Sequence record: MW825358.1
Reading direction: 5' to 3' (one strand)
DNA: 64,000 nucleotides
The position numbers and the translations under genes are program-made. This document shows, one piece after another, positions 32,528-41,964 of this stretch (position 1 is its first letter; each line of letters starts with the position of its first letter). The notes under the pieces are model-generated. The model had not been told where the DNA came from, ran no database searches, and worked only from the letters and a program-made list of their open reading frames with translations.

Positions 32528-33016
32528 ATGAAGCTAGATGAAGCCCTAGCCCTTGCCGGGGAGCATCCGTTGTCCACGTACGCTTGGGGCGTTGGCGCGG
32601 TGATTCTCTTCAATTCGCTGGTAGCCAAAGACCAGCAGATCGATGTTAATCACAGCGGTCAACAAGCCCATGACAAGCTGCGCCGGCTTCCTTCTTCCAC
32701 CTTGGCTGCCATCTTGGTCCGTGAGGTCCAAATTGAAGGTAGCAATATCGAGTTTCTGCCAACTGTTGGGGAACAAAGTCAGGGGCGTCCGCCCACCATT
32801 CCTTCAGGACGTAAGGCCAATCCGGTCATTACCCTGGTGATGGTGGTGCTGGCGGCAGTATCCATTGGTTTGGTGATCAGCAACTATCGTACGGGCAGCG
32901 ATGCGCAAAAGGCCGCCACGGCCGATGTGCTGAAAGTCGTTGTCCAGACCATGGGTGAGCTGGCCAAAGAAAGCAATGACACTGCGAAGCAAAATACAGA
33001 TGCGCCTCAGCAATAA
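32528..33016 (+). CDS. Hypothetical membrane protein
   Basis: Hydrophobic segments AWGVGAVILFNSLV and VITLVMVVLAAVSIGLVIS. Confidence 0.6.
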   Translation: MKLDEALALAGEHPLSTYAWGVGAVILFNSLVAKDQQIDVNHSGQQAHDKLRRLPSSTLAAILVREVQIEGSNIEFLPTVGEQSQGRPPTIPSGRKANPVITLVMVVLAAVSIGLVISNYRTGSDAQKAATADVLKVVVQTMGELAKESNDTAKQNTDAPQQ

Positions 33017-33021
33017 GGCAA

Positions 33022-33057
33022 CATAAGCCCCCGCCTTGAAAGGCGGGGGTCTATGCC
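33022..33057. terminator. Bidirectional terminator, CATAA/CTATGCC flanked
   Basis: gcccccgcct-tgaa-aggcgggggt between convergent genes. Confidence 0.75.
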
Positions 33058-33066
33058 GTTAAAAGG

Positions 33067-33675
33067 TCAAGCCAGCTGCTGGGCCACTTCGGTGCGCACA
33101 GGAGACAGGGCTTTGGTGACTTGTCGCAAGATGGCTGTCGGTTCACGGTAGGTGCCGTACTCCTTCATGTACTTGGTTTCCAGTTCACGCTTGTTGGCCG
33201 TCTTCTCTGTGCTCGGACCCCAACCTAACAGGCCCCACAGGCGCACTGCGACAAACATCGCATAGCGCAGATACCACTTAACCCCTGCCGCATCCATGGC
33301 ATCAAGGAAGATAAAGTCTGCTTCCTTACGGGAGATCTGATAGGGGACATCATCCTTGTACATGGTCTTGGTTTCGCACAGAATGTCGTGCAAGACCGCA
33401 GCCTGTCCGTAGTTGCCCCACGGCGGGACCAACCACCACAAGGGCTTGGGAACGCTAGCACCATCGCTTAAGAAACCAGCCGGTACATAGCCCCAGATGT
33501 TGGATTGCTTTTCGCTTTTGTAGTAGCGAAAGGACCGCTTGATCTTGTAGTAGGAACCTCCAAGTAGCTCAGAGGCTACCGGGTCATATTCCATCTGCAA
33601 ATCGGTATCAAAGTTGGTAAAACTCTCAGCCTGCTGCAACTGGGTCGCAGTTGGCACGTAGGGTGTGATTTGCAT
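33067..33675 (-). CDS. DUF1353 domain protein
   Basis: VPAGFLSDGASVPKPLWWLVPPWGNYGQAAVLHDILC...SRKEADFIFLDAM..GV signature. Confidence 0.88.
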   Translation of the reverse strand: MQITPYVPTATQLQQAESFTNFDTDLQMEYDPVASELLGGSYYKIKRSFRYYKSEKQSNIWGYVPAGFLSDGASVPKPLWWLVPPWGNYGQAAVLHDILCETKTMYKDDVPYQISRKEADFIFLDAMDAAGVKWYLRYAMFVAVRLWGLLGWGPSTEKTANKRELETKYMKEYGTYREPTAILRQVTKALSPVRTEVAQQLA

Positions 33676-33691
33676 TGTTGCTCCTTGATCG

Positions 33692-33730
33692 AATAAAAAC
33701 CCGGGAGGCGAACCTCCCGGGATCTATGCC
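33692..33730 (-). terminator. Intrinsic terminator on the minus strand with upstream GGCATAG
   Basis: cccgggagg/cctcccggg stem, UUCG loop on the minus strand, followed by tttttatt. Confidence 0.8.
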
Positions 33731-33733
33731 GCT

Positions 33734-35080
33734 TTACTGAATTTGCTTGACAGCGTTGTGGGTGGCAATGCGTCGACCCGGGTGTTCACCGGAGAAGAAC
33801 GAATGATCATCCACGTTAAAGAAGACTACATCGCGGATACCCACGTACTCCATTGACGTCACCGGCTCCCAACGCAGGACCCCGTAATCGTCAACCAACA
33901 CCAACTCGCCCACCATCTCAGGACCAAACATCTTGGTACTGCCATCTTGCAGGGTCATCGGTGTGGAGTCAGAGGCCACAATGGAAATACCCGACTCAGA
34001 GACCATGCGATAGCACGGCTGGGGCATGACCTTGTTCTGGCGTACTTGACGCGAGACAATGGCATCAGGATTGTAATCCGTACCATCAATCCACTCGCCA
34101 ATGGCAATATCCTTGGCCTGACGCTGCTCATCCATCCAGGTCTCAACCCACACACAGCCGGTGTCACCACCGCCTCCGCCACCACCTCCGCCACCTCCAC
34201 CACCCCCGGCGCCAGAGCCATCTTCACGGGTGATGATGACCATGTTCTGGGTTACGTTGAGGGTGACAAAGTTGAAGCGGAACTGAAGTACAGCATTGCC
34301 GTTGCGACGGATGGTCACTAAGATGCGACCACGGTTATACCGACGCAAGGCCGCGTTGGGATCTCGTTGAGAGTAGTTGTTGGCGGTGGTAGTCATATCC
34401 GCACCAATCTCAACGGAGCGATCGGTATTGACTGGCATGTTATTGCCAAGACCATAGATCGTGCCAGATTGGACGTTGAATGAACCGTAGTTACCCTGCT
34501 GCCATTGATACCCGCTGGGACCTGCGCCACGTGGAATCCACAGGCGCCCATAGGTGTGCTCTTGGGTCTGGTAATCCACGGTATAGGCATCACCAAAGTC
34601 AGCTCGCGGAGACTGTGCCCATTGACCAGAGGCCACCACCCGCCCATTGGGGTAATGGTAGCTAACGGCATTGGCGTTATCTTCCAGGCGCTGGGCCAGG
34701 GAGACAAAGTTGCGAGTGTATTGGGTGATATCCCACGTCCCGTTGCGGCGTAAGGTGAAGACTAAACGATGCAAGGTGCGCGGGTTACCGTCCCAGTCCA
34801 CCGCTGAGGCATCAGACCACATCGAGTCGTAACTACCGACATCCCCCATCGAGGGGACCGTATAGGCCACCGTACCACGACCGGCCCAGGTGTTAGTTAC
34901 ATCCCAGCCATCACCTCGGTAATGTCCCACATCGGCAATCTTAGAACCATTGGCAATGGAGGCAAACCGCATGTAGCTGCCGTCTGCGTTAAAGAACCCC
35001 TCGATGGCCGGACCGTTAGGGTCCGGCTCGAAAAGGGTGTTAAACGACTGTCCAGCAGGATTGAAGAAGTAATCAGACAT
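33734..35080 (-). CDS. Putative tail-tip protein with poly-Gly linker and C-terminal Hint (intein/Hedgehog-like) domain
   Basis: Hint starts at G/CVWVETW (Cys codon 34154-34156) and ends at ...VVFFNVDDHSFF...IATHN/A (33755); N-terminus F..LFEP...G.....RFASIANGSKIADVGHY...D..N.WAGRG resembles fibre-associated small proteins. Confidence 0.82.
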   Translation of the reverse strand: MSDYFFNPAGQSFNTLFEPDPNGPAIEGFFNADGSYMRFASIANGSKIADVGHYRGDGWDVTNTWAGRGTVAYTVPSMGDVGSYDSMWSDASAVDWDGNPRTLHRLVFTLRRNGTWDITQYTRNFVSLAQRLEDNANAVSYHYPNGRVVASGQWAQSPRADFGDAYTVDYQTQEHTYGRLWIPRGAGPSGYQWQQGNYGSFNVQSGTIYGLGNNMPVNTDRSVEIGADMTTTANNYSQRDPNAALRRYNRGRILVTIRRNGNAVLQFRFNFVTLNVTQNMVIITREDGSGAGGGGGGGGGGGGGGDTGCVWVETWMDEQRQAKDIAIGEWIDGTDYNPDAIVSRQVRQNKVMPQPCYRMVSESGISIVASDSTPMTLQDGSTKMFGPEMVGELVLVDDYGVLRWEPVTSMEYVGIRDVVFFNVDDHSFFSGEHPGRRIATHNAVKQIQ

Positions 35081-35089
35081 GGAGCCTCC

Positions 35090-37198
35090 TTAGGCTTTCG
35101 CCTCCAAGGCCTCCAGACGCGCCAGGACGGCCGCCAACTGGATTTCCAGTACGCGAGTACGCTCTTCTGCCACATCGGCTCGTGCGTTCGCTGCGTCGGC
35201 CTCACAGCCTGCAGCGTATGCCATCTCAAAAGCCGAACCGGTATAGTCCACCGCCAGACGATCCACCTTGCGCTTGATACCATGGCGATAGGTGGTCACA
35301 CGGTCAGGGGCTGCCTTCTGAAGGTCTTGGGCGATCACACCACGCTGGTGCTCATCCAGTTCCTTATGCGTCCACTGCTTAAAGTCTACCTCTCGCCACA
35401 GGGCACGGGCTTCAATGGAAGAGATCTTCTTCTTAAAGCGCTTATCTGAGGGCTGGAAACCAGCACCTGCGATGGCGCGGCCGTTATGGACCACGTAGTT
35501 GCCACCTGCTTGGAACTGGAAGTAGCGTGAACCGGCCACACGCAAGGTAATGGACCCATCGCCATCTTGATACAGATAACCGGAGTTACCAATGGCCAGT
35601 GTATTAAGCGAGGCATTGGAACCAATCACCACACGCTGGTCAATCTGGGCCTGCAACGGATTGACCGCCCGGGCCTGGACCAACTGTGCGGTACGAATCG
35701 GGGTCATGTACACCGAGTTGGACGAACCAGCTTCCGCATCACCTTGCGAGGCAATACCGTAGTTCTGCACGTTACCCAGACCCACCTGTCCGGCAGTGGT
35801 ACCGTGCGGATTATCGGTCCGGTTGGCGTGAGCGGCAATATTCGGATCAGGCTGACTGGTGGTGTGGACACGTCCCATTGAGGTGGCATCCACCGTGGCA
35901 CGGATTTCACCGTTGAGCCAGGCCAGATAGATCTGATTACCGCTGCTGTTGCGCACCTGCTTGTAATCTTCAACCGAACCTAACCCGACCTGTGCCTTTG
36001 TCACTTGGTGGGGATTGGACGTGTTGTTGATGTGGGCTGTGAACTGCGTACCGACGGCCGCATCAATCAAGGCCTTGGAGGTAGCCGGGGTCATGAACAA
36101 GTTCGTGGCCGTGCCGGCCTGCGCTTGGGCAGTAGTGGCAGTCAGGAAGTTGTCGACATTCCCCAGACCCACATGACCCTTATTGGTGTTATGTGGGTTA
36201 TTGGTATTGTTGATGTGTGCATTGAGCGGTGTGAGGGCCAGCGCGGCAATGGCCGCTCCGGACAAGGTCGCCGTCATGTACGCATCACCGCTACCGGCTT
36301 GGGCCTGAGCGGTGCTGGCCAAGGGGTAGTTGACCACCGAGCCCAAACCCACTTGACCCTTGGTCACCTGGTGGGGGTTGTTGGTATTGGCCACGTGTGC
36401 ATTAAACGCACCACCGACCTGGGCCGCAATAGCTTGCTTGGTGGTCAGGGCCGTCATGTACACCACATTGGATGTACCTGCCTCAGCTTGTACCTGTGTG
36501 GCTACCGGGTAATTCTCAACAGCACCCAAGCCGACCTGACCCTTGGTGGTCTGATGCGGATTGGAGGTGTTGTTGATGTGCTCACCCAGACCGTTTTGGG
36601 CCGACTGAATCAAGGCGCGCAGTTCATTGTCCCGCAGGTCAATGTACTGACGCTGTTCATCAAAGGCAGCCTGATCGCCCAGCAAGATCGCACGGCGGAT
36701 CTGTTCCAGGGCCACCACCACGTACTCAAAGCCGTAGACATCACCGATGTCATGCAAGTGAGCCGTCGGCGGGAAGTACTCAGGGGCACCGATGATATCG
36801 CCCCACAGCACAGTGCGATTATCCAGATCCAACGAGGCAAGCATCTGCTCGATCATAGACACCGAGGAGCTGTAGTCGCCACCGATGGCCTGATAGTCAA
36901 ACTCAACCTCTGTGGCTTGGCAGGTCGGCAAGAACAGCAGGACCGAACAGATTTCCTGACAAGCGCGCTGCGAGGCGGCCAGGAACATGTGCACCGGACG
37001 ATAGTCCGTATCTGGGATCAGCTCGACCCCAGTGGTCTTGTTACGTACCACCAAACGGCGTGTGTAAAACGGTCCCCGCGTGGGGACAATGGCTCGACTC
37101 GATCCGGGCGCACCGATGGTGCGTTGCTCGGCGGCGACCAGATTGGTCGCCGCCTCACCGGTGAGATCAAGCGGGAGTTGAAGAACGATAGGACTCAT
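35090..37198 (-). CDS. Tail fibre protein (phiKZ gp145/146-like N-terminus) with HxxNxxNPH repeats and S74 chaperone
   Basis: PLDLTG....N N-terminus; 5 NPH.VTK.QVGLG repeats; PSDKRFKKKI...RGVIAQDLQKAAP...VDY. Confidence 0.88.
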   Translation of the reverse strand: MSPIVLQLPLDLTGEAATNLVAAEQRTIGAPGSSRAIVPTRGPFYTRRLVVRNKTTGVELIPDTDYRPVHMFLAASQRACQEICSVLLFLPTCQATEVEFDYQAIGGDYSSSVSMIEQMLASLDLDNRTVLWGDIIGAPEYFPPTAHLHDIGDVYGFEYVVVALEQIRRAILLGDQAAFDEQRQYIDLRDNELRALIQSAQNGLGEHINNTSNPHQTTKGQVGLGAVENYPVATQVQAEAGTSNVVYMTALTTKQAIAAQVGGAFNAHVANTNNPHQVTKGQVGLGSVVNYPLASTAQAQAGSGDAYMTATLSGAAIAALALTPLNAHINNTNNPHNTNKGHVGLGNVDNFLTATTAQAQAGTATNLFMTPATSKALIDAAVGTQFTAHINNTSNPHQVTKAQVGLGSVEDYKQVRNSSGNQIYLAWLNGEIRATVDATSMGRVHTTSQPDPNIAAHANRTDNPHGTTAGQVGLGNVQNYGIASQGDAEAGSSNSVYMTPIRTAQLVQARAVNPLQAQIDQRVVIGSNASLNTLAIGNSGYLYQDGDGSITLRVAGSRYFQFQAGGNYVVHNGRAIAGAGFQPSDKRFKKKISSIEARALWREVDFKQWTHKELDEHQRGVIAQDLQKAAPDRVTTYRHGIKRKVDRLAVDYTGSAFEMAYAAGCEADAANARADVAEERTRVLEIQLAAVLARLEALEAKA

Positions 37199-37228
37199 GG
37201 CCCGCTTAGCTCCTAATTACGTTGTTGG

Positions 37229-40200
37229 TTACGGCGTCAGGACCGTCGGGTTGGCACGGCTGTAAGCCTCCACCAGCACCGGACGCAGACGTCCGTTGCG
37301 CTGAGACTTGTACATCACACCGTTCCAATCACTGAAGTACAGACGGTTCGGACGAACCAGCGGGTTATTCAGACCCAAGTAGCTCATCTCCCACGCACCG
37401 CCGTTGTAACGGTAGTGGCGCTGCTTACCATTGTCTGCAGCCACACCCAAGCGGACATAGTCCCGATACATGCGCGGACGCTGCAGCACCTTGAAGGTGG
37501 CATTGGGTTGCTCAATGGAGATCACACCCCAGGTGCTGGGGGTGTCGACAAACGGAGCCAGACGCGTATCGTCTTCCAGATCAATCACGACCTGCTCGGC
37601 AGCCAGATAACTGGTGGAGCCGTGCTGGGTGACATCGATGGTGAGATAGTTACCTGCACGGACCACACGAATGCGCACCGGACCTGCCACATCCCAACCG
37701 TGACCGGCCTCGACGTAGTCAGTACCCACGCGGTTGGCATCCACCGCACCGGTATCAGCCCATGCCAGAGTGCCGTTGGCGCTGGCAATGTCGCTCACAC
37801 CGATCTGACCCGGATTCAAGGCAATGGTCTTGAGGCGATAACGCATCGAGGTCCCATTGTCCAGCGCAGCTGCGCCACCGGGGGTGCGAATCACTGCCAG
37901 GGCAAAGGGACGACGGTTCTGTGTCACCACAGCGGCCAACACACCCAGGCCGTTGGCCTTGGTTGAATCCGAATCCAGCTCCACCTCTAAAGTGTAGTTG
38001 GTCGAATACTCAGTGGCCGTCAAGGTCGCATTGACCCCGGTCATGACCGTGTTATCCAGCAGCAAGGCATCCTTGGCTGTCGACCAACCCCAATCATCCA
38101 ACACATCGGTGTTGCCGTAGAGGTAGTTGAGTAGACGCGGGCTGTGCGGGATAAAGTCGTGGTAGTCCTCACGCAGGACGTTCTGAATGGTTTGCACCGT
38201 CAGCTCGTCATCGTCATTGTCCACCACCGAGACCCACTCCATCAGGCTACCGGTGGTCTGGTCGCTGTTGAGGGTCAAGGGCAGATCGCCAAAGGCCACA
38301 TCGCCCAGGCTCGGACGAGCACGGGTAAAGGGCGGCAAGCGCGTGGTCAGGTAGGTGATCCCTGTCGGTTCAGCCACCAGCGTGCTGGAGGTGCTGACAA
38401 AGAAACGCCCATCTTGCGAGAGCGGGGTGACTTGGATGGCACGGCGCAGACCCGGACCGCGGGCATACAACCGCACAATCGAGTTACCGCTGTCATCACT
38501 GACGGTGTAGCCGAAGTTCAAGGAGATCTCGTAGTTCTCCGTCTCCAGCGTAGCGGTGGACAGATTCAACTGACGCGGGGTGATGACCACACGGGTGGAG
38601 GTCGGGCTGTAGGCACCGTAGCTATCGCCACCGGTGATAATGGCCACGATATCACTCAGCGGCGAGGTGATCTGATTGGCCGGCAGCGTCACCTGACCCA
38701 GCAAGGTCCAGTTCTCAGTGGCCGTCTCAGTGGCCGGATAGATGACCAAGGACACTGCATTCGCAGCGATCTCCGCGGCCGTCTTGCCATCGAGCTTATC
38801 TGAGTCTGCTGCCTTCTCCGTCTTGCCAAGCTTTGCACTCAGGGCCGTATCCACCTGTGCGGTGGTGTAGGCACCGACTTGCGCGGCTGTGGTGTTATGC
38901 GGGTTGGCTGTGGAGTTGATGTGAGAAGACAGGGTGTTACCCACGGCCGAGTCAATCAACTGCTTGCTGCGCAGCACCGTCATGTAACGATCTGCGGCCA
39001 GACCTGCTTCAGCTTCGGCCTGTGTAGCGGTGGCGTAGTTGTTCACATTCCCCAAGCCGACCTGTTCTTTGGTCACCTCGTGAGGATTGTTCAAATTGGC
39101 AACGTGGGCTGCCAGATCGCCACCACCACCGCCTCCACCGCCCATGGCGGTAATCAGCGCTGCGGCACCTGCCGGGGTCAAGAACAGGTTGTTGGCCGTA
39201 CCGGCCTGGGCCTGTGCTGTGGTTGCCGTGGCAAAGTTATCCACATTACCCAAGTTCACCTGTGACTTGGTGACTGCATGGGGATTGTTGGAGTTGTTGA
39301 TGTGATTGGTGAAGTCCGTCTTGACGGCCACCTGGATCAACTGCACCGTACGCAAGGGGGTCATATAGGCGGCATTGGACGTGCCTGCCTCTGCCACGGC
39401 TTGCGAGGCGAAACCGTAGTTCTGCACCAACCCCAGTCCCACCTGCTCGGCGGTGACGTTGTGCGGGTTGTTGACATTGTCCACGTGATCGCTAAAGCCC
39501 TGCAATGCGATGGAGTTAATCGCCTCACGGGTCATGGCCGGGGTCATGTACAGCTCGTTGCTGACACCTGCACGGGCATCAACGGCTGTGGCAATACCGT
39601 AATTCAACACGTTACCCAAACCCACGTGGGACTTGTTGGTATTGTGCGGGTTATCCGTACGGGAGGTATGTGCGGTGATAGCGGCAGTGGCCGTGACATC
39701 AATCAACTGCTTGGTGCGCAGGACAGTCATGAACTTGTTCGCAGCCGTACCGGCTTGGGCTTCAGCCTGGGTGGCCGTTGCGAAGTTGTCCACATCACCC
39801 AGACCGATCTGGGACTTGTTGGTGTTATGCGGGTTGTTGGAATTGTTGATGTGGTCATTCATCGTGTTACCGATGAGGGCCTGCACCAACTGCGCACCGC
39901 GTTGAACTGTCAAGTACCGGTTGGGGGCTGTGCCCGCTTGCGCCTCAGCAATGGAGGCCACCGGGTAGTTCTCAACCAACTCCAGACCCACCTGGGCCTT
40001 GGTCACACCGTGCGGATTGTTCTTATCGGCAATGTGGGCTTGCAGGCCGCCTTCACCGGAGGCCAGCAGGGCATCACGGATCTCGCTCAGCTTGTCCACC
40101 ATCTCCGACATCCCCACCATGTCATCCAGATGCCAAACGTGATCGATCGGCGGGAAGGCATAGGGCAGATCCGCCACCTGTTCCCAGGTAAGGCGGCGCG

Positions 40201-40585
40201 GGTTGGTCAGTTTGGTCGAGAGAATCTCAACGATCTTGGCAGCATCCAAGGTCCAGTCACCGCCCAGGGTCTGATAGGTCAGACGCACCGCACCGGTGAG
40301 GGTCTTGTCGTAAAACGAAATCGAACCGAAGATGGCAGATGCGGTTGCATAGGACGCATCGTGGAAATAGTGCGAGGGAATGTAGTCAACGCCCTCCACC
40401 AGGGTCCGATTGCTCGGCAGGTGCACCACCGTCATGCCTTCCGCAAAGAACGGGGCAGCCGCCGGGATGATGTAGTAATACTCGGACAACTCGGGCGGCG
40501 AGATGACCGAATGTTCTGCCGTAATCTTATTCGAAGCCAGCGTGCCGCTGGGATCGAACGGATAGGCAATAGTGGGATTGCTCAT
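37229..40585 (-). CDS. Tail fibre protein (phiKZ gp145/146-like) with 7 NPH repeats and a C-terminal beta-sandwich domain
   Basis: Start at ATG 40585 (MSNPTIAYPFDPSG); YQTLGG, W..V...P..FPP..H motif shared with the neighbouring fibre. Confidence 0.88.
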   Translation of the reverse strand: MSNPTIAYPFDPSGTLASNKITAEHSVISPPELSEYYYIIPAAAPFFAEGMTVVHLPSNRTLVEGVDYIPSHYFHDASYATASAIFGSISFYDKTLTGAVRLTYQTLGGDWTLDAAKIVEILSTKLTNPRRLTWEQVADLPYAFPPIDHVWHLDDMVGMSEMVDKLSEIRDALLASGEGGLQAHIADKNNPHGVTKAQVGLELVENYPVASIAEAQAGTAPNRYLTVQRGAQLVQALIGNTMNDHINNSNNPHNTNKSQIGLGDVDNFATATQAEAQAGTAANKFMTVLRTKQLIDVTATAAITAHTSRTDNPHNTNKSHVGLGNVLNYGIATAVDARAGVSNELYMTPAMTREAINSIALQGFSDHVDNVNNPHNVTAEQVGLGLVQNYGFASQAVAEAGTSNAAYMTPLRTVQLIQVAVKTDFTNHINNSNNPHAVTKSQVNLGNVDNFATATTAQAQAGTANNLFLTPAGAAALITAMGGGGGGGGDLAAHVANLNNPHEVTKEQVGLGNVNNYATATQAEAEAGLAADRYMTVLRSKQLIDSAVGNTLSSHINSTANPHNTTAAQVGAYTTAQVDTALSAKLGKTEKAADSDKLDGKTAAEIAANAVSLVIYPATETATENWTLLGQVTLPANQITSPLSDIVAIITGGDSYGAYSPTSTRVVITPRQLNLSTATLETENYEISLNFGYTVSDDSGNSIVRLYARGPGLRRAIQVTPLSQDGRFFVSTSSTLVAEPTGITYLTTRLPPFTRARPSLGDVAFGDLPLTLNSDQTTGSLMEWVSVVDNDDDELTVQTIQNVLREDYHDFIPHSPRLLNYLYGNTDVLDDWGWSTAKDALLLDNTVMTGVNATLTATEYSTNYTLEVELDSDSTKANGLGVLAAVVTQNRRPFALAVIRTPGGAAALDNGTSMRYRLKTIALNPGQIGVSDIASANGTLAWADTGAVDANRVGTDYVEAGHGWDVAGPVRIRVVRAGNYLTIDVTQHGSTSYLAAEQVVIDLEDDTRLAPFVDTPSTWGVISIEQPNATFKVLQRPRMYRDYVRLGVAADNGKQRHYRYNGGAWEMSYLGLNNPLVRPNRLYFSDWNGVMYKSQRNGRLRPVLVEAYSRANPTVLTP

Positions 40586-40647
40586 GAAGAATATCTCCAG
40601 CAGAGGACGCATCGTATGGCACGATGTTAAAAAATACGTGTACCATA

Positions 40648-40653
40648 TCATAG
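40648..40653 (-). promoter_or_regulatory. Candidate late promoter (cTATGa on the minus strand)
   Basis: About 65 nt upstream of the fibre start in an AT-rich divergent spacer. Confidence 0.3.
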
Positions 40654-40719
40654 CTATTGGCCCTGCCTTGGTCCCGTATTTCCTCTTTAATTGTAATTCT
40701 CGTTTCGAGGAGTAATTCC

Positions 40720-41964
40720 ATGTCTTACCAGCTCGTCGAAGCCCGAGCACGCTCAAAAGACTTGAGCGCTGAGTGGGCGGTGGTGGATGTCACCAACATC
40801 ACCATCGGCACTTTGTTCACGACCTACTCCAATGTGTGGTTGACCTTGTCGCATACTGCGCTGGACCACAACGTCTATTTGGAACTCAACAGCATTCGCG
40901 AAGCCCTGGCCGCCAGCTACAGTAGCCTGACCTTGGCCCAGTGGCTGACGCAAAACGGCAATGGGACTTTGCCTACGCAAAACACGGCCCCCAAGTTAGG
41001 CTTAAAGCTGGTCAAGTATTCTGATGCATGGCGTGCAGGCTATGACATCAAGCCGATCAATCGCTTCCGCAGTGATGATTCACAGTTGGCTGTGGGTGAT
41101 AAGCATGATCTGTTGATGTCTAAGACCGGGGTGGATTTCATGGTCTACCACCGCTATGCCATGGTCAGCGTTAACGGGTTCTTCCACCGCGTGGCAGGTT
41201 CTACCACCGGTCTGCAAGTCATTGAGGGCAATCGCTCAGGGCGGTTGGCCAATGATAACCAAATTGGTATCCACTCTTTCCGAGAAGTGGGACGTTTGGA
41301 GTATCTGCCGATCACCCCATCAATGATCTTTAAGACGGTAGAAGATCAAGGCTACAAGACCCGGGCTTATCTCCAGCTGCCGGCCGCGGCCAGTGACAAG
41401 ATCGCCCTGTTGGTCTTGGGTGGGTATCTGCACGTGCTTGATGAGGTCTATACCCGCACCGGTCCGACGACCTTGTGCATTAACTTCAACAAGCTGGCCT
41501 GGCCTGAGCGCTATTTTGACAGCCGGCGCTTTATTGACCTGCAAAGTCTGCCTTTGACCTTAGATCCTGATAACCCCACCCATGTGGCGGTGGAGGATCT
41601 GTACTCTGATGCAGTGCTGCAAGCGTATATGACCTTGCCGCAGTCCTTTGTGGTGTTGGTCAATGCCAAGGACTTCTTTGCACGCAAGCGCCCGACGGTC
41701 AACATTAAGTTGCCTGGTCGCTTTGAGGTTCCCACCACCACCGAGCGTCTACCCATGTTTGGCGCCTGGGGTAAGGTCTATGACTATGCGATCTTCCCCG
41801 ATTGGGGCACGCATGTGTTGGCTTGCTCAGAAAACCAGAAACAGAACTACCTGTTCCGCACGACCAAGTGGCAAGGTGACCGGGCTATCAGCGCGGTCCT
41901 TGATGCGTATCGGCCGTGGGATTGGTCTGATGCATACATGCTTGAAATGGGCCGGTTCGGCTAA
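40720..41964 (+). CDS. Conserved phiKZ-family virion structural protein
   Basis: ATG at 40720 with RBS gaggag; MVSVNGFFH, LLVLGGYLH and PQSFVVLV motifs. Confidence 0.72.
   Translation: MSYQLVEARARSKDLSAEWAVVDVTNITIGTLFTTYSNVWLTLSHTALDHNVYLELNSIREALAASYSSLTLAQWLTQNGNGTLPTQNTAPKLGLKLVKYSDAWRAGYDIKPINRFRSDDSQLAVGDKHDLLMSKTGVDFMVYHRYAMVSVNGFFHRVAGSTTGLQVIEGNRSGRLANDNQIGIHSFREVGRLEYLPITPSMIFKTVEDQGYKTRAYLQLPAAASDKIALLVLGGYLHVLDEVYTRTGPTTLCINFNKLAWPERYFDSRRFIDLQSLPLTLDPDNPTHVAVEDLYSDAVLQAYMTLPQSFVVLVNAKDFFARKRPTVNIKLPGRFEVPTTTERLPMFGAWGKVYDYAIFPDWGTHVLACSENQKQNYLFRTTKWQGDRAISAVLDAYRPWDWSDAYMLEMGRFG

What the first reader, a model, noticed from the sequence alone, without database searches (positions are those of the whole stretch)
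33734..35080. Tail-tip protein fused to a C-terminal Hint autoprocessing domain
Seen: 308-aa N-terminal region, a 14-Gly linker written in mixed codons, then a 134-aa Hint domain from G/C (34154-34156) to ...THN (33755), leaving only AVKQIQ. The +1 residue is Ala, so it cannot splice. The block-B TxxH is replaced by ASDSTP. The gene is directly downstream of an S74-chaperone fibre and upstream of DUF1353, the position where an adhesin is expected. Known: Hedgehog/BIL Hint domains form an N-terminal thioester that can be hydrolysed or transferred to a nucleophile. Inference: a virion protein that self-cleaves or covalently ligates its N-terminal part to a partner, such as the freshly processed fibre end, or to a host surface molecule. 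A fibre assembled with two self-processing chemistries (S74 plus Hint) would be an unusual module.
Basis: partly seen in the sequence, partly recalled or inferred. Interest (0 to 1): 0.8.

Follow-up and report, generated by a model that had tools for sequence, protein, structure and literature searches.

The report
Self-cleaving Hint cap on tail protein
A protein in the tail-fibre gene cluster of the Xanthomonas jumbo phage LucasX ends in an intein-like (Hint) domain with intact catalytic residues; it belongs to a large, uncatalogued family of such end-caps on phage tail-fibre proteins that most likely cut themselves off after synthesis.

Summary
The ORF at 33734-35080 (-) is LUCX_306 of Xanthomonas phage vB_XciM_LucasX. 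It has a 291-aa N-part, 14 Gly in mixed codons plus DTG, Cys309, a 134-aa domain ending His441-Asn442, and the tail AVKQIQ.

Pfam and NCBIfam find nothing in the C-domain. An AlphaFold model (pLDDT 91) matches only inteins, BIL domains and Hedgehog Hint domains (best 2LWY, TM 0.76-0.81). A small family profile hits the gp41-1 intein (E 5e-4).

A search of 1.84 billion representative proteins finds 651 clusters. Nearly all carry the domain at the extreme C-terminus of 100-3000-aa proteins, and the N-parts that can be identified are phage tail-tip or tail-fibre proteins.

- Invariant in the family: Cys1, S-x-x-T-P in place of TxxH, and His-Asn.
- Orthologous loci exist with and without the cassette, as a clean indel.

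The cassette most likely excises itself using both junctions. I favour acyl transfer onto the tail Lys, but this is unproven.

This is a new variant of a known kind.

The parts
33734..35080 (-). LUCX_306 ORF, 448 aa: N-part, Gly linker, Hint cassette, Lys tail, stop
34208..35080 (-). N-part, residues 1-291. Mostly beta, fold not assignable. Residues 8-122 match phrog_11610 (unknown function).
   Evidence: Orthologues are P0001-P0005.
34157..34207 (-). Linker, residues 292-308: 14 Gly in mixed codons, then D-T-G. G308 is the -1 residue of the scissile bond.
   Evidence: A Gly-rich upstream stretch is a family feature: median 40% Gly in the 20 aa upstream, and -1 is Gly in 57/133.
33755..34156 (-). 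Hint (BIL-like) domain, residues 309-442, Cys309 to Asn442
   Evidence: AF2 pLDDT 91.4. All top-50 Foldseek PDB hits are inteins, BIL or Hedgehog Hint domains. Profile hit to the gp41-1 intein.
34154..34156 (-). Cys309, the putative N-S acyl-shift nucleophile
   Evidence: Cys in 133/133 family members that cover the column
33959..33973 (-). Block B, S370-D-S-T373-P374. Thr373 stands where inteins have the TxxH His.
   Evidence: S 148/157, T 149/157, P 156/157
33755..33760 (-). His441-Asn442, block G (site of Asn cyclisation)
   Evidence: H 157/157, N 154/155
33737..33754 (-). C-flank tail AVKQIQ, with Lys445 at 33746-33748
   Evidence: One Lys in 147/147 family tails, never replaced by Arg; 19 expected by chance. 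The same holds in the further loci L014-L028.
33700..33721 (-). Intrinsic terminator hairpin (9 bp, 8 GC, then a T run) directly after the stop
   Evidence: Conserved in RTH11 and in the Hint-less locus L008.
35090..37198 (-). LUCX_307, upstream neighbour: 702-aa fibre protein with Peptidase_S74 at residues 584-634 (35297-35449)
37229..40585 (-). LUCX_308, a tail-fibre-like protein that shares its N-terminal phrog_2163 domain with LUCX_307
33067..33675 (-). LUCX_305, downstream neighbour: DUF1353 / phrog_1158 'tail assembly chaperone'

Best explanation
LUCX_306 is a protein of the distal tail-fibre gene cluster. Its last 140 residues form a self-contained autoprocessing cassette: a Gly-rich linker, a 134-aa Hint domain of the bacterial-intein-like (type-A-BIL-like) kind, and a short tail with a Lys.

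Shown:
- The fold is Hint.
- Across the 157 members aligned, both junction residues are conserved absolutely or nearly so: Cys1 in all 133 that cover the column, His 157/157 and Asn 154/155. The tail Lys is present in all 147 short tails.
- The cassette sits almost always at the C-terminus of phage tail-tip or tail-fibre proteins.
- Orthologous loci differ by a clean presence or absence of the cassette.

Inferred mechanism:
1. After translation, Cys309 attacks the G308 carbonyl (N-S acyl shift) and forms a thioester.
2. The acyl group is taken over by a tethered nucleophile. I favour the epsilon-amine of the invariant tail Lys445, which would give an isopeptide branched intermediate.
3. Asn442 cyclises and releases the 15-kDa Hint domain.

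The virion protein would then be the roughly 33.5-kDa N-part ending in its Gly linker, carrying the hexapeptide on an isopeptide bond. If water or the alpha-amine is the acceptor instead, it would end in a free carboxylate or be joined to the tail linearly.

The Hint domain is therefore a removable maturation module, not part of the mature fibre. It is functionally comparable to the S74 intramolecular chaperone of the neighbouring fibre protein but chemically unrelated to it.
For: Fold and homology:
- AF2 model pLDDT 91.4.
- Foldseek PDB gives 57 hits at E <= 1e-3, and the top 50 are all intein, BIL or Hedgehog Hint domains. Best is the C. thermocellum BIL 2LWY, TM 0.76/0.78; the Ssp DnaB mini-intein reaches TM 0.80.
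- The profile of 5 family members hits the gp41-1 intein at E 5e-4 and aligns block B.

Catalytic residues under selection in 157 diverse members (median pairwise identity 34%):
- Cys1 133/133, His 157/157, Asn 154/155, and S-x-x-T-P at 148-156 of 157.

Both junctions matter:
- His-Asn is invariant, and a tail of 3-9 aa is present in 127/131 members and is never absent.
- Each of the 147 short tails has a Lys, exactly one in 146 of them, and it is never swapped for Arg. Lys makes up only 2.6% of these proteins, so 19 tails with Lys are expected by chance.
- Three tandem-cassette proteins have a second Hint that lacks both Asn and the tail.

Dispensable for the mature protein:
- Syntenic loci run S74 fibre, then the N-part protein, then DUF1353, with the cassette (LucasX, RTH11, L017, L018) or without it (L008, L009/L010).
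- The DNA flanks align on both sides of an indel of about 400 nt.

Modular cap:
- Hint domains on unrelated N-parts (P0006-P0008) are 56-62% identical to LucasX's, about as close as those of its orthologues.
- The N-parts carry Phage-tail_3, FNIII-A_GpJ, Phage_T7_tail, Phage_Tail_Tip, PB4_spike, Gp53-like_C and Mtd_N.

Precedents:
- Type A BILs cleave or splice without a +1 nucleophile (PMC4031507).
- BIL2 of Tetrahymena forms a Lys isopeptide bond (PMC8616854).
Against: - No biochemical or proteomic datum exists for this protein or any family member. The LucasX paper reports no virion mass spectrometry, and the XacN1 text does not mention its family member ORF231.
- The block-B His that normally promotes the N-S acyl shift is missing, and the -1 residue is Gly. 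That is the opposite of the bulky -1 residues shown to compensate for loss of that His (PMC6333167). The first step could therefore be slow or need a trigger.
- The tail is disordered in the model (pLDDT < 50 for the last 5 residues), so the position of Lys445 relative to Cys309 is unknown.
- The Lys could be catalytic, an anchor, or a site of modification rather than the acceptor.
- Hint-less orthologues keep a similar Q-rich tail without Lys. This fits a linear spliced product as well as it fits the isopeptide one.
Confidence: 0.68

Rival explanations
1. N-terminal self-cleavage only. The thioester at G308/C309 is hydrolysed by water and Hint plus tail leave as one 15.9-kDa piece. The domain would be a disposable folding or assembly cap, working like the S74 intramolecular chaperone or like Hedgehog processing without the sterol.
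For: - Cys1 is invariant.
- The G/C junction follows a flexible Gly linker.
- The position is C-terminal on fibre proteins, as for S74.
- Cleavage products dominate in type A BILs.
- Hint-less orthologues function without the domain.
Against: This reading does not explain why His-Asn (157/157, 154/155), a tail of at least 3 aa, and the tail Lys (147/147) are all invariant. Hedgehog-type domains that only cleave at the N-junction do not need a terminal Asn (my knowledge of the family).
Confidence: 0.25
2. Type-A-BIL splicing through the alpha-amine. Asn442 cyclises first, the freed amino group of A443 attacks the thioester, and a linear N-part-AVKQIQ protein results. This is the same product that the Hint-less orthologues encode directly.
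For: - The mechanism is described for type A BILs.
- The best structural match is a BIL domain.
- Hint-less orthologues P0003 and P0004 end in a Gly linker plus a Q-rich tail of 8 aa that aligns with the tails of the Hint-bearing proteins.
Against: - A free 6-aa peptide would have to stay bound after cleavage.
- The +1 residue is Pro in 26/131 members, a poor alpha-amine nucleophile.
- It gives no role for the Lys, which is never replaced by Arg and which the Hint-less orthologues lack.
Confidence: 0.15
3. Trans-ligation. The thioester is attacked by an amine or hydroxyl of another virion protein (for example the processed S74 fibre) or of a host surface molecule, attaching the N-part covalently.
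For: Thioester chemistry allows it, and BIL2 conjugates its N-flank to other proteins. The protein sits at a position where a distal adhesin is expected.
Against: - The invariant cis Lys and Asn argue for an internal reaction.
- The cassette occurs on fibres of very different phages with no shared partner. S74 and DUF1353 are absent from L011, L012 and L013.
- Orthologues lacking the cassette keep the same neighbours.
Confidence: 0.08
4. A selfish or neutral intein-like passenger. The cassette persists because it removes itself harmlessly and brings the phage no benefit.
For: - Presence/absence varies among orthologues as a clean indel.
- Near-identical cassettes sit on unrelated N-parts.
- Base composition is the same as in the host gene.
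Against: - There is no homing endonuclease; the domain is a 134-aa mini-domain.
- It is not inserted at conserved sites of essential enzymes as inteins are.
- It is confined to the extreme C-terminus, and the N-parts that could be identified are tail proteins, across 651 clusters. That pattern suggests a function tied to fibre biology.
Confidence: 0.2
5. A non-catalytic Hint fold that is kept in the virion as a binding or structural tip domain.
For: The block-B His is lost, and Hint folds can degenerate.
Against: Cys1, His-Asn and the tail Lys are invariant over members only about 34% identical to each other. The domain is absent from orthologues in otherwise unchanged loci.
Confidence: 0.06

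Closest known systems
Type A bacterial intein-like (BIL) domains, e.g. the Clostridium thermocellum BIL, PDB 2LWY
   Same: - Best structural match (E 1e-6, TM 0.76/0.78).
- Cys at position 1, C-terminal His-Asn and no +1 nucleophile.
- Mini-size with no endonuclease.
- Expected to cleave or ligate by aminolysis.
   Different: - No Pfam or NCBIfam model recognises the LucasX domain, even at E <= 10.
- The block-B His is Thr.
- The C-flank is only 3-9 aa and always holds one Lys.
- It is found at the extreme C-terminus of phage tail proteins rather than inside bacterial surface or secreted proteins.
Mini-inteins (gp41-1, Ssp/Npu DnaB, class 3 DnaB inteins)
   Same: Same fold (TM 0.7-0.8). gp41-1 is the only significant hit at sequence level (E 5e-4). 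Blocks A, B, F and G can be aligned.
   Different: - No +1 Cys/Ser/Thr: Ala here, Cys never and Ser/Thr in 12% of the family.
- Not embedded in a conserved host protein.
- His replaced by Thr in block B.
BIL2 of the Tetrahymena BUBL locus (PDB 6Y75 / 6TMM)
   Same: Hint fold (ranks 8, 15, 22 and 27). It is the documented precedent for transfer of the N-flank onto a Lys epsilon-amine, which is the chemistry I favour here.
   Different: In BUBL the flanks are ubiquitin-like domains and the Lys lies in a folded downstream domain or in another protein. Here the Lys is in a 6-aa tail. Sequence identity is only about 10%.
Hedgehog C-terminal autoprocessing domain (PDB 1AT0)
   Same: Hint fold (rank 23, TM 0.77). 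C-terminal position in the precursor, a Gly/Cys scissile bond, and release of an N-terminal functional part.
   Different: Hedgehog has TxxH and a sterol-recognition region and uses cholesterol as the nucleophile. It has no terminal His-Asn and no Lys tail.
Peptidase S74 intramolecular chaperone of endosialidases and tail fibres (present in the neighbour LUCX_307)
   Same: A C-terminal, self-removing module that is shuffled among phage fibre and spike proteins.
   Different: Unrelated fold and chemistry (a Ser-Lys dyad in a trimer versus a Cys thioester and Asn cyclisation in a monomeric Hint). The resemblance is in role only.
Pre-toxin HINT domains of polymorphic toxins
   Same: A Hint peptidase at the end of long filamentous proteins, some with tail-fibre repeats (PMC3482391).
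   Different: Those domains stand before a C-terminal toxin domain, which they release. Here nothing but a 6-aa tail follows, and there is no Pfam PT-HINT match.

Membership tests
Hint superfamily (fold) | Hint beta-fold with the N- and C-termini meeting at the active site | tested here: met
   AF2 pLDDT 91.4. Foldseek probability 1.00, TM 0.7-0.8, to 50 or more intein, BIL and Hedgehog structures.
Hint superfamily (sequence models) | Match to a curated Hint/intein profile (Pfam, NCBIfam) | tested here: not met
   No family at E <= 10 for the window domain or for four relatives. The only sequence link is the custom profile against PDB, gp41-1 at E 5e-4.
Inteins / BILs | Block A nucleophile (Cys or Ser) as the first residue | tested here: met
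   Cys309; 133/133 in the family
Inteins / BILs | Block B T-x-x-H | tested here: not met
   S370-x-x-T373-P. The column is Thr in 149/157 and never His.
Inteins / type A BILs | Block G His-Asn at the C-terminal junction | tested here: met
   H441-N442; 157/157 and 154/155
Canonical (class 1) inteins | Cys, Ser or Thr at +1 of the C-extein | tested here: not met
   Ala443. Across the family Cys is 0 and Ser/Thr 16/131.
Canonical inteins | Insertion inside a conserved host protein, leaving a functional spliced product | tested here: inconclusive
   Only 6 aa follow the domain. However, Hint-less orthologues end in the same linker plus a similar short tail, as an intein-free allele would.
Type A BIL domains | Cys1, His-Asn and no +1 nucleophile | tested here: met
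   Definition taken from PMC4031507.
Type A BIL domains | Demonstrated autocleavage or aminolytic splicing | not testable with these tools
   Needs protein-level data; none has been published for this family.
Hedgehog/Hog autoprocessing domains | Sterol-recognition region after the Hint; nucleophile supplied by a small molecule | tested here: not met
   The protein ends 6 aa after Asn442.
Peptidase S74 intramolecular chaperone | Match to PF13884 | tested here: not met
   No hit in LUCX_306. The hit is in the neighbour LUCX_307.
Phage tail-fibre / tail-tip proteins (N-part) | Recognisable fibre, tip or receptor-binding domain | tested here: inconclusive
   Only phrog_11610, of unknown function. 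The AF2 model of the N-part is poor (pLDDT 54.8) and Foldseek gives nothing. The assignment rests on gene position.

The most novel reading that the evidence does not exclude
The cassette performs 'side-chain splicing'. The fibre protein's C-terminal Gly is moved from the Cys309 thioester onto the epsilon-amine of the invariant tail Lys, and Asn442 cyclisation then discards the Hint domain. Mature receptor-binding proteins of many phages would end in a branched isopeptide-linked peptide. In the tandem-cassette proteins this could extend to a short chain of such ligations. It would be a widespread, enzyme-free post-translational modification of phage tail tips that nobody has looked for.
Probability: 0.3. 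Interest if true: 0.85.

Novelty: new variant of a known kind. Interest (0 to 1): 0.64.

Why it matters
Tail fibres and tail tips decide which bacteria a phage can attach to, and how they mature is understood for only a few systems (the S74 chaperones, and Tfa-type or gp38-type assembly factors). Three points follow from this work.

- A second, chemically distinct self-removing C-terminal module appears to be in wide use. It covers 651 clusters at 50% identity, on J-like, T7-like, Mu-like and jumbo-phage fibre proteins. No curated profile recognises it, so these genes are annotated 'hypothetical'.
- The family is a natural experiment in Hint chemistry. It has no block-B His, Gly at -1 in this protein and in 43% of the members, and an invariant Lys in a tiny C-flank. 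That makes the question 'what resolves the thioester?' directly answerable with one mass spectrum.
- For annotation, the predicted gene product is not the mature virion protein. Its last roughly 140 residues should not be modelled as the receptor-binding tip.

Tried and rejected
- **Curated profile libraries.** Pfam and NCBIfam scans of the C-domain and of four relatives at E <= 10 gave nothing. phmmer of the domain against PDB also gave nothing.
- **Profile of full-length relatives against PDB.** It returned only single-chain antibodies, an artefact of the Gly run matching (G4S)n linkers. I rejected it.
- **N-part structure.** The AF2 model was poor (pLDDT 54.8) and Foldseek found no match at E <= 1e-3, so no fold is assigned.
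- **Diverse alignment in the 1.84-billion library.** A single-sequence phmmer search was used instead.
- **Pattern scans.** The scan of bacterial genomes with the diverse alignment failed for lack of a conserved stretch. With a closer alignment it found only 3 loci, in Dyella, Kordiimonas and a Lysobacter MAG, because the method needs near-exact peptide words.
- **Second copy in the window.** None was found.
- **Obligate DUF1353 or S74 partnership.** Rejected. Both persist in Hint-less loci and are absent from several Hint-bearing loci.
- **Foreign composition of the cassette.** Rejected. GC and GC3 equal those of the rest of the gene.
- **Literature.** Ten full-text searches found no paper that describes a Hint or BIL domain at the C-terminus of phage tail proteins. 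The LucasX paper reports no virion mass spectrometry, and the XacN1 text does not mention ORF231.
Full report
**1. What is in the sequence**

The window is part of Xanthomonas phage vB_XciM_LucasX (MW825358.1, 305,651 bp, a myovirus isolated on X. citri 306). Window 33000-40900 is 100% identical to record 274651-282551. The ORF at 33734-35080 (-) is LUCX_306, annotated 'hypothetical protein'.

The translation reads as follows:
- a 291-aa N-part;
- 14 consecutive Gly, written with 7 GGT, 3 GGA, 3 GGC and 1 GGG;
- D-T-G, then Cys309;
- a 134-aa domain ending T-H-N (Asn442);
- the tail AVKQIQ and a stop.

A good ribosome-binding site (AAGGAGG) precedes the ATG. A strong hairpin with a T run follows the stop at 33721-33700.

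**2. Surroundings**

Read 5' to 3' on the minus strand, the cluster is:
- LUCX_308, tail-fibre-like;
- LUCX_307, 702 aa, which shares its N-terminal phrog_2163 domain with LUCX_308 and has Peptidase_S74 at residues 584-634;
- LUCX_306;
- a terminator;
- LUCX_305, DUF1353 / phrog_1158 'tail assembly chaperone';
- a second terminator.

The same order occurs in Xanthomonas phage RTH11 and in two IMG/VR contigs of about 310 kb. A more distant version of the whole protein (26% identity over 99% of its length) lies behind baseplate and tail genes in the 227-kb PhiXhv-12 group.

**3. The C-terminal domain is a Hint domain that curated profile libraries miss**

Pfam, NCBIfam and a sequence search of the PDB give nothing, even at E <= 10.

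An AlphaFold2 model of residues 307-448, built on 12 sequences, is confident (pLDDT 91.4, pTM 0.86). Only the last five residues are disordered. Foldseek against the PDB gives 57 matches at E <= 1e-3, and the first 50 are without exception inteins, BIL domains or Hedgehog autoprocessing domains:
- the C. thermocellum BIL 2LWY (E 1.1e-6, TM 0.76/0.78);
- the Ssp DnaB mini-intein (TM 0.80);
- gp41-1;
- the Tetrahymena BUBL BIL2;
- Hedgehog 1AT0.

Independently, a profile of five diverse family members hits the gp41-1 intein at E 5e-4. It aligns the family's S-x-x-T-P onto the intein's S-x-x-H, and onto T-x-x-H-P of the PhoCDC21-1 intein.

**4. It is one member of a large family of C-terminal cassettes on phage tail proteins**

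phmmer of the 140-aa domain against 1.84 billion representative proteins returns 651 clusters at E <= 1e-3, 163 of them at E <= 1e-10. In almost all of the 150 listed, the match ends 1-8 residues before the end of a protein that is anywhere from 100 to 3013 aa long.

Among 46 full-length members, the Pfam domains in the N-parts are:
- Phage-tail_3 (8 members) and FNIII-A_GpJ (4 members);
- PKD and fn3;
- Rcc01698_C, Gp53-like_C, Phage_Tail_Tip, PB4_spike and Mtd_N.

Further loci add Phage_T7_tail plus Phage_Tail_Tip, and CBM_4_9.

The genomic contexts are also tail regions:
- behind a lambda-J-like gene (L011);
- in the fibre position of a Mu-like prophage (L012);
- next to Caudo_TAP, DUF1353 and a lysozyme (L007);
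- at the end of an 1824-aa 'VlrC' protein next to the baseplate wedge of the Stenotrophomonas phage DLP_6.

**5. What is conserved**

In 157 aligned members whose domains are on median 34% identical to each other:
- Cys1 is present in 133/133 that cover the column.
- Block B is Ser 148/157, Thr 149/157 (never His) and Pro 156/157.
- His is 157/157 and Asn 154/155.
- A second Cys (C356) is Cys in 122 and Ser in 21.

Upstream, the 20 residues before Cys1 are on median 40% Gly, and the -1 residue is Gly in 57/133.

Downstream, the tail is 3-9 aa in 127/131 members and is never absent. The +1 residue is never Cys and is Ser or Thr in only 16/131.

Every one of the 147 short tails contains a Lys, exactly one in 146 of them. 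It is usually the penultimate residue (104/147; 87 tails end in Pro, most as K-P) and it is never replaced by Arg. Lys makes up only 2.6% of these proteins, so 19 tails with Lys would be expected by chance. The new loci L014-L028 also show it. In LucasX this residue is Lys445. A residue that is kept without exception and cannot be exchanged for Arg is doing chemistry, not supplying charge.

**6. The cassette comes and goes**

The orthologues P0003 and P0004 keep the N-part and the Gly linker. They then end after 8 Q-rich residues that align with the tails of the Hint-bearing proteins but contain no Lys. P0005 lacks the linker as well.

Their loci are otherwise unchanged: an S74 fibre of 701 aa, the 310-aa protein, then DUF1353 in L008; a 627-aa protein, the 282-aa protein, then DUF1353 in L009/L010.

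At the DNA level, LucasX, RTH11 and L008 align on both sides of an indel of about 400 nt. Upstream they share the end of the N-part and the linker. Downstream they share the terminator hairpin, the ribosome-binding site and the start of the DUF1353 gene.

Conversely, Hint domains attached to unrelated N-parts (P0006-P0008) are 56-62% identical to LucasX's, about as close as those of its own orthologues at 62-64%. The unit that moves is therefore linker, Hint and Lys tail together. The mature function of the N-part does not need it. The cassette's base composition equals that of the rest of the gene.

**7. How it most likely works**

*Shown:* the fold, the residues, the architecture, and the presence/absence pattern.

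*Established for the superfamily* (PMC4031507):
- Cys1 converts the preceding peptide bond into a thioester.
- The terminal Asn cyclises and cuts the following bond.
- Type A BILs have His-Asn and no +1 nucleophile. They mainly cleave, but they can ligate their flanks when the freed amino group attacks the thioester.
- The Tetrahymena BIL2 transfers its N-flank to a Lys epsilon-amine (PMC8616854).

*Inference:* both junction residues are invariant, so both bonds are cut and the Hint domain leaves the protein. The tethered, invariant Lys is the best candidate for the group that takes the acyl chain before Asn cyclisation. This follows the order of canonical splicing, except that the branched intermediate is an amide and hence irreversible.

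The alternatives are that the Lys activates water or the alpha-amine, or anchors the tail. Three observations bear on the choice:
- Pro at +1 in 20% of members speaks mildly against alpha-amine ligation as the general mechanism.
- The Lys-free tails of the Hint-less orthologues show that the Lys belongs to the cassette's chemistry and not to the mature protein.
- In three related tandem-cassette proteins the second Hint has lost both Asn and the Lys tail together. This fits the idea that the two work as a pair, but it is probably a single evolutionary event.

One point argues for caution. The block-B His is missing and the -1 residue is Gly, whereas bulky -1 residues are what compensates for that His in engineered inteins (PMC6333167). 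The first step may therefore be slow or conditional.

**8. Comparison with known systems**

By its defining residues the domain passes the type A BIL test: Cys1, His-Asn and no +1 nucleophile. It fails the canonical intein tests (TxxH, a +1 nucleophile, an internal position) and the Hedgehog test (no sterol-recognition region).

It differs from the type A BILs as characterised in PMC4031507 and from the solved Hint structures in four ways:
- block B is S-x-x-T-P;
- the C-flank is very short and carries an obligatory Lys;
- it has a strict C-terminal position on phage receptor-binding proteins;
- it is invisible to the curated profiles tried (Pfam, NCBIfam).

In role it parallels the S74 intramolecular chaperone of the neighbouring LUCX_307, but the two are independent. 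S74 occurs without Hint (L008), and Hint mostly occurs without S74.

**9.

- Hint fold and probable self-cleavage: yes.
- 'Cannot splice': too strong.
- Ligation to the fibre or to the host: possible in principle, but the internal Lys and Asn argue against it (my estimate 0.08).
- 'Tail-tip protein': only positional. The N-part could not be modelled well (pLDDT 54.8) and has no structural match.

**10. Novelty and limits**

Ten full-text searches found no description of a Hint or BIL cassette on phage tail proteins. The library lacks most subscription journals, so this is absence of evidence only.

No protein-level data exist. The LucasX paper has no virion mass spectrometry, and the XacN1 paper's text does not mention ORF231, that phage's family member.

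I rate this a new variant of a known kind. The chemistry class is known. The subfamily, its invariant Lys and its biological setting appear undescribed. The decisive evidence is descriptive and simple: the mass and the C-terminal peptide of the protein in virions.

Noticed in passing
Family members P0015 (1269-1403 and 1409-1553), P0064, P0126, P0140: Tandem cassettes. Hint1 ends in His-Asn, a 5-7-aa peptide containing Lys follows, and a second Hint then starts with Cys-Val. In P0064, P0126 and P0140 the second Hint ends the protein with no Asn and no Lys tail.
   Followed up: partly
window 34013-34015 (Cys356 of LUCX_306): A second conserved Cys lies inside the Hint domain (Cys in 122/157, Ser in 21/157), just before block B. 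It could be a redox partner of Cys309 or a relay nucleophile. A recent paper reports a second Cys forming a branched intermediate in Hedgehog (PMC12054796, title seen, paper not read).
   Followed up: no
L008:3380-3610 compared with window 33640-34260: The Hint-less orthologue keeps the Gly linker and a Q-rich 8-aa tail ending in ...EIQ, much like the ...KQIQ or ...KEIQ tails of the Hint-bearing proteins. It therefore looks like the exact excision product, with Thr where the others have Lys.
   Followed up: partly
window 35090-37198 and 37229-40585: LUCX_307 and LUCX_308 share the same N-terminal domain of about 260 aa (phrog_2163 / phrog_13857) and the same fibre repeats. They are two paralogous fibres that probably attach to the same site. 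Only LUCX_307 has an S74 domain.
   Followed up: no
window 34166-34207: The (GGN)14 stretch sits exactly at the upstream boundary of the presence/absence indel. Gly-rich linkers precede the cassette throughout the family. GGN microhomology may be the recombination site by which the cassette is exchanged.
   Followed up: no
L002 (Stenotrophomonas phage DLP_6, KU682439.2): An 1824-aa 'VlrC' protein next to the baseplate wedge carries the cassette at its end. The tblastn report listed a second matching place elsewhere in the same record, which I did not examine.
   Followed up: no
window 33067-33675 and loci L007, L008, L009, L003: DUF1353 (phrog_1158 'tail assembly chaperone') recurs one or two genes after the fibre-tip gene whether or not the Hint cassette is present. 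It belongs to the fibre locus, not to the cassette.
   Followed up: partly
window 34208-35080: The N-part has a confidently predicted beta core only in patches (residues about 100-122, 147-181, 201-231 and 246-276) and no structural neighbour. It may fold only as an oligomer or together with a partner.
   Followed up: partly
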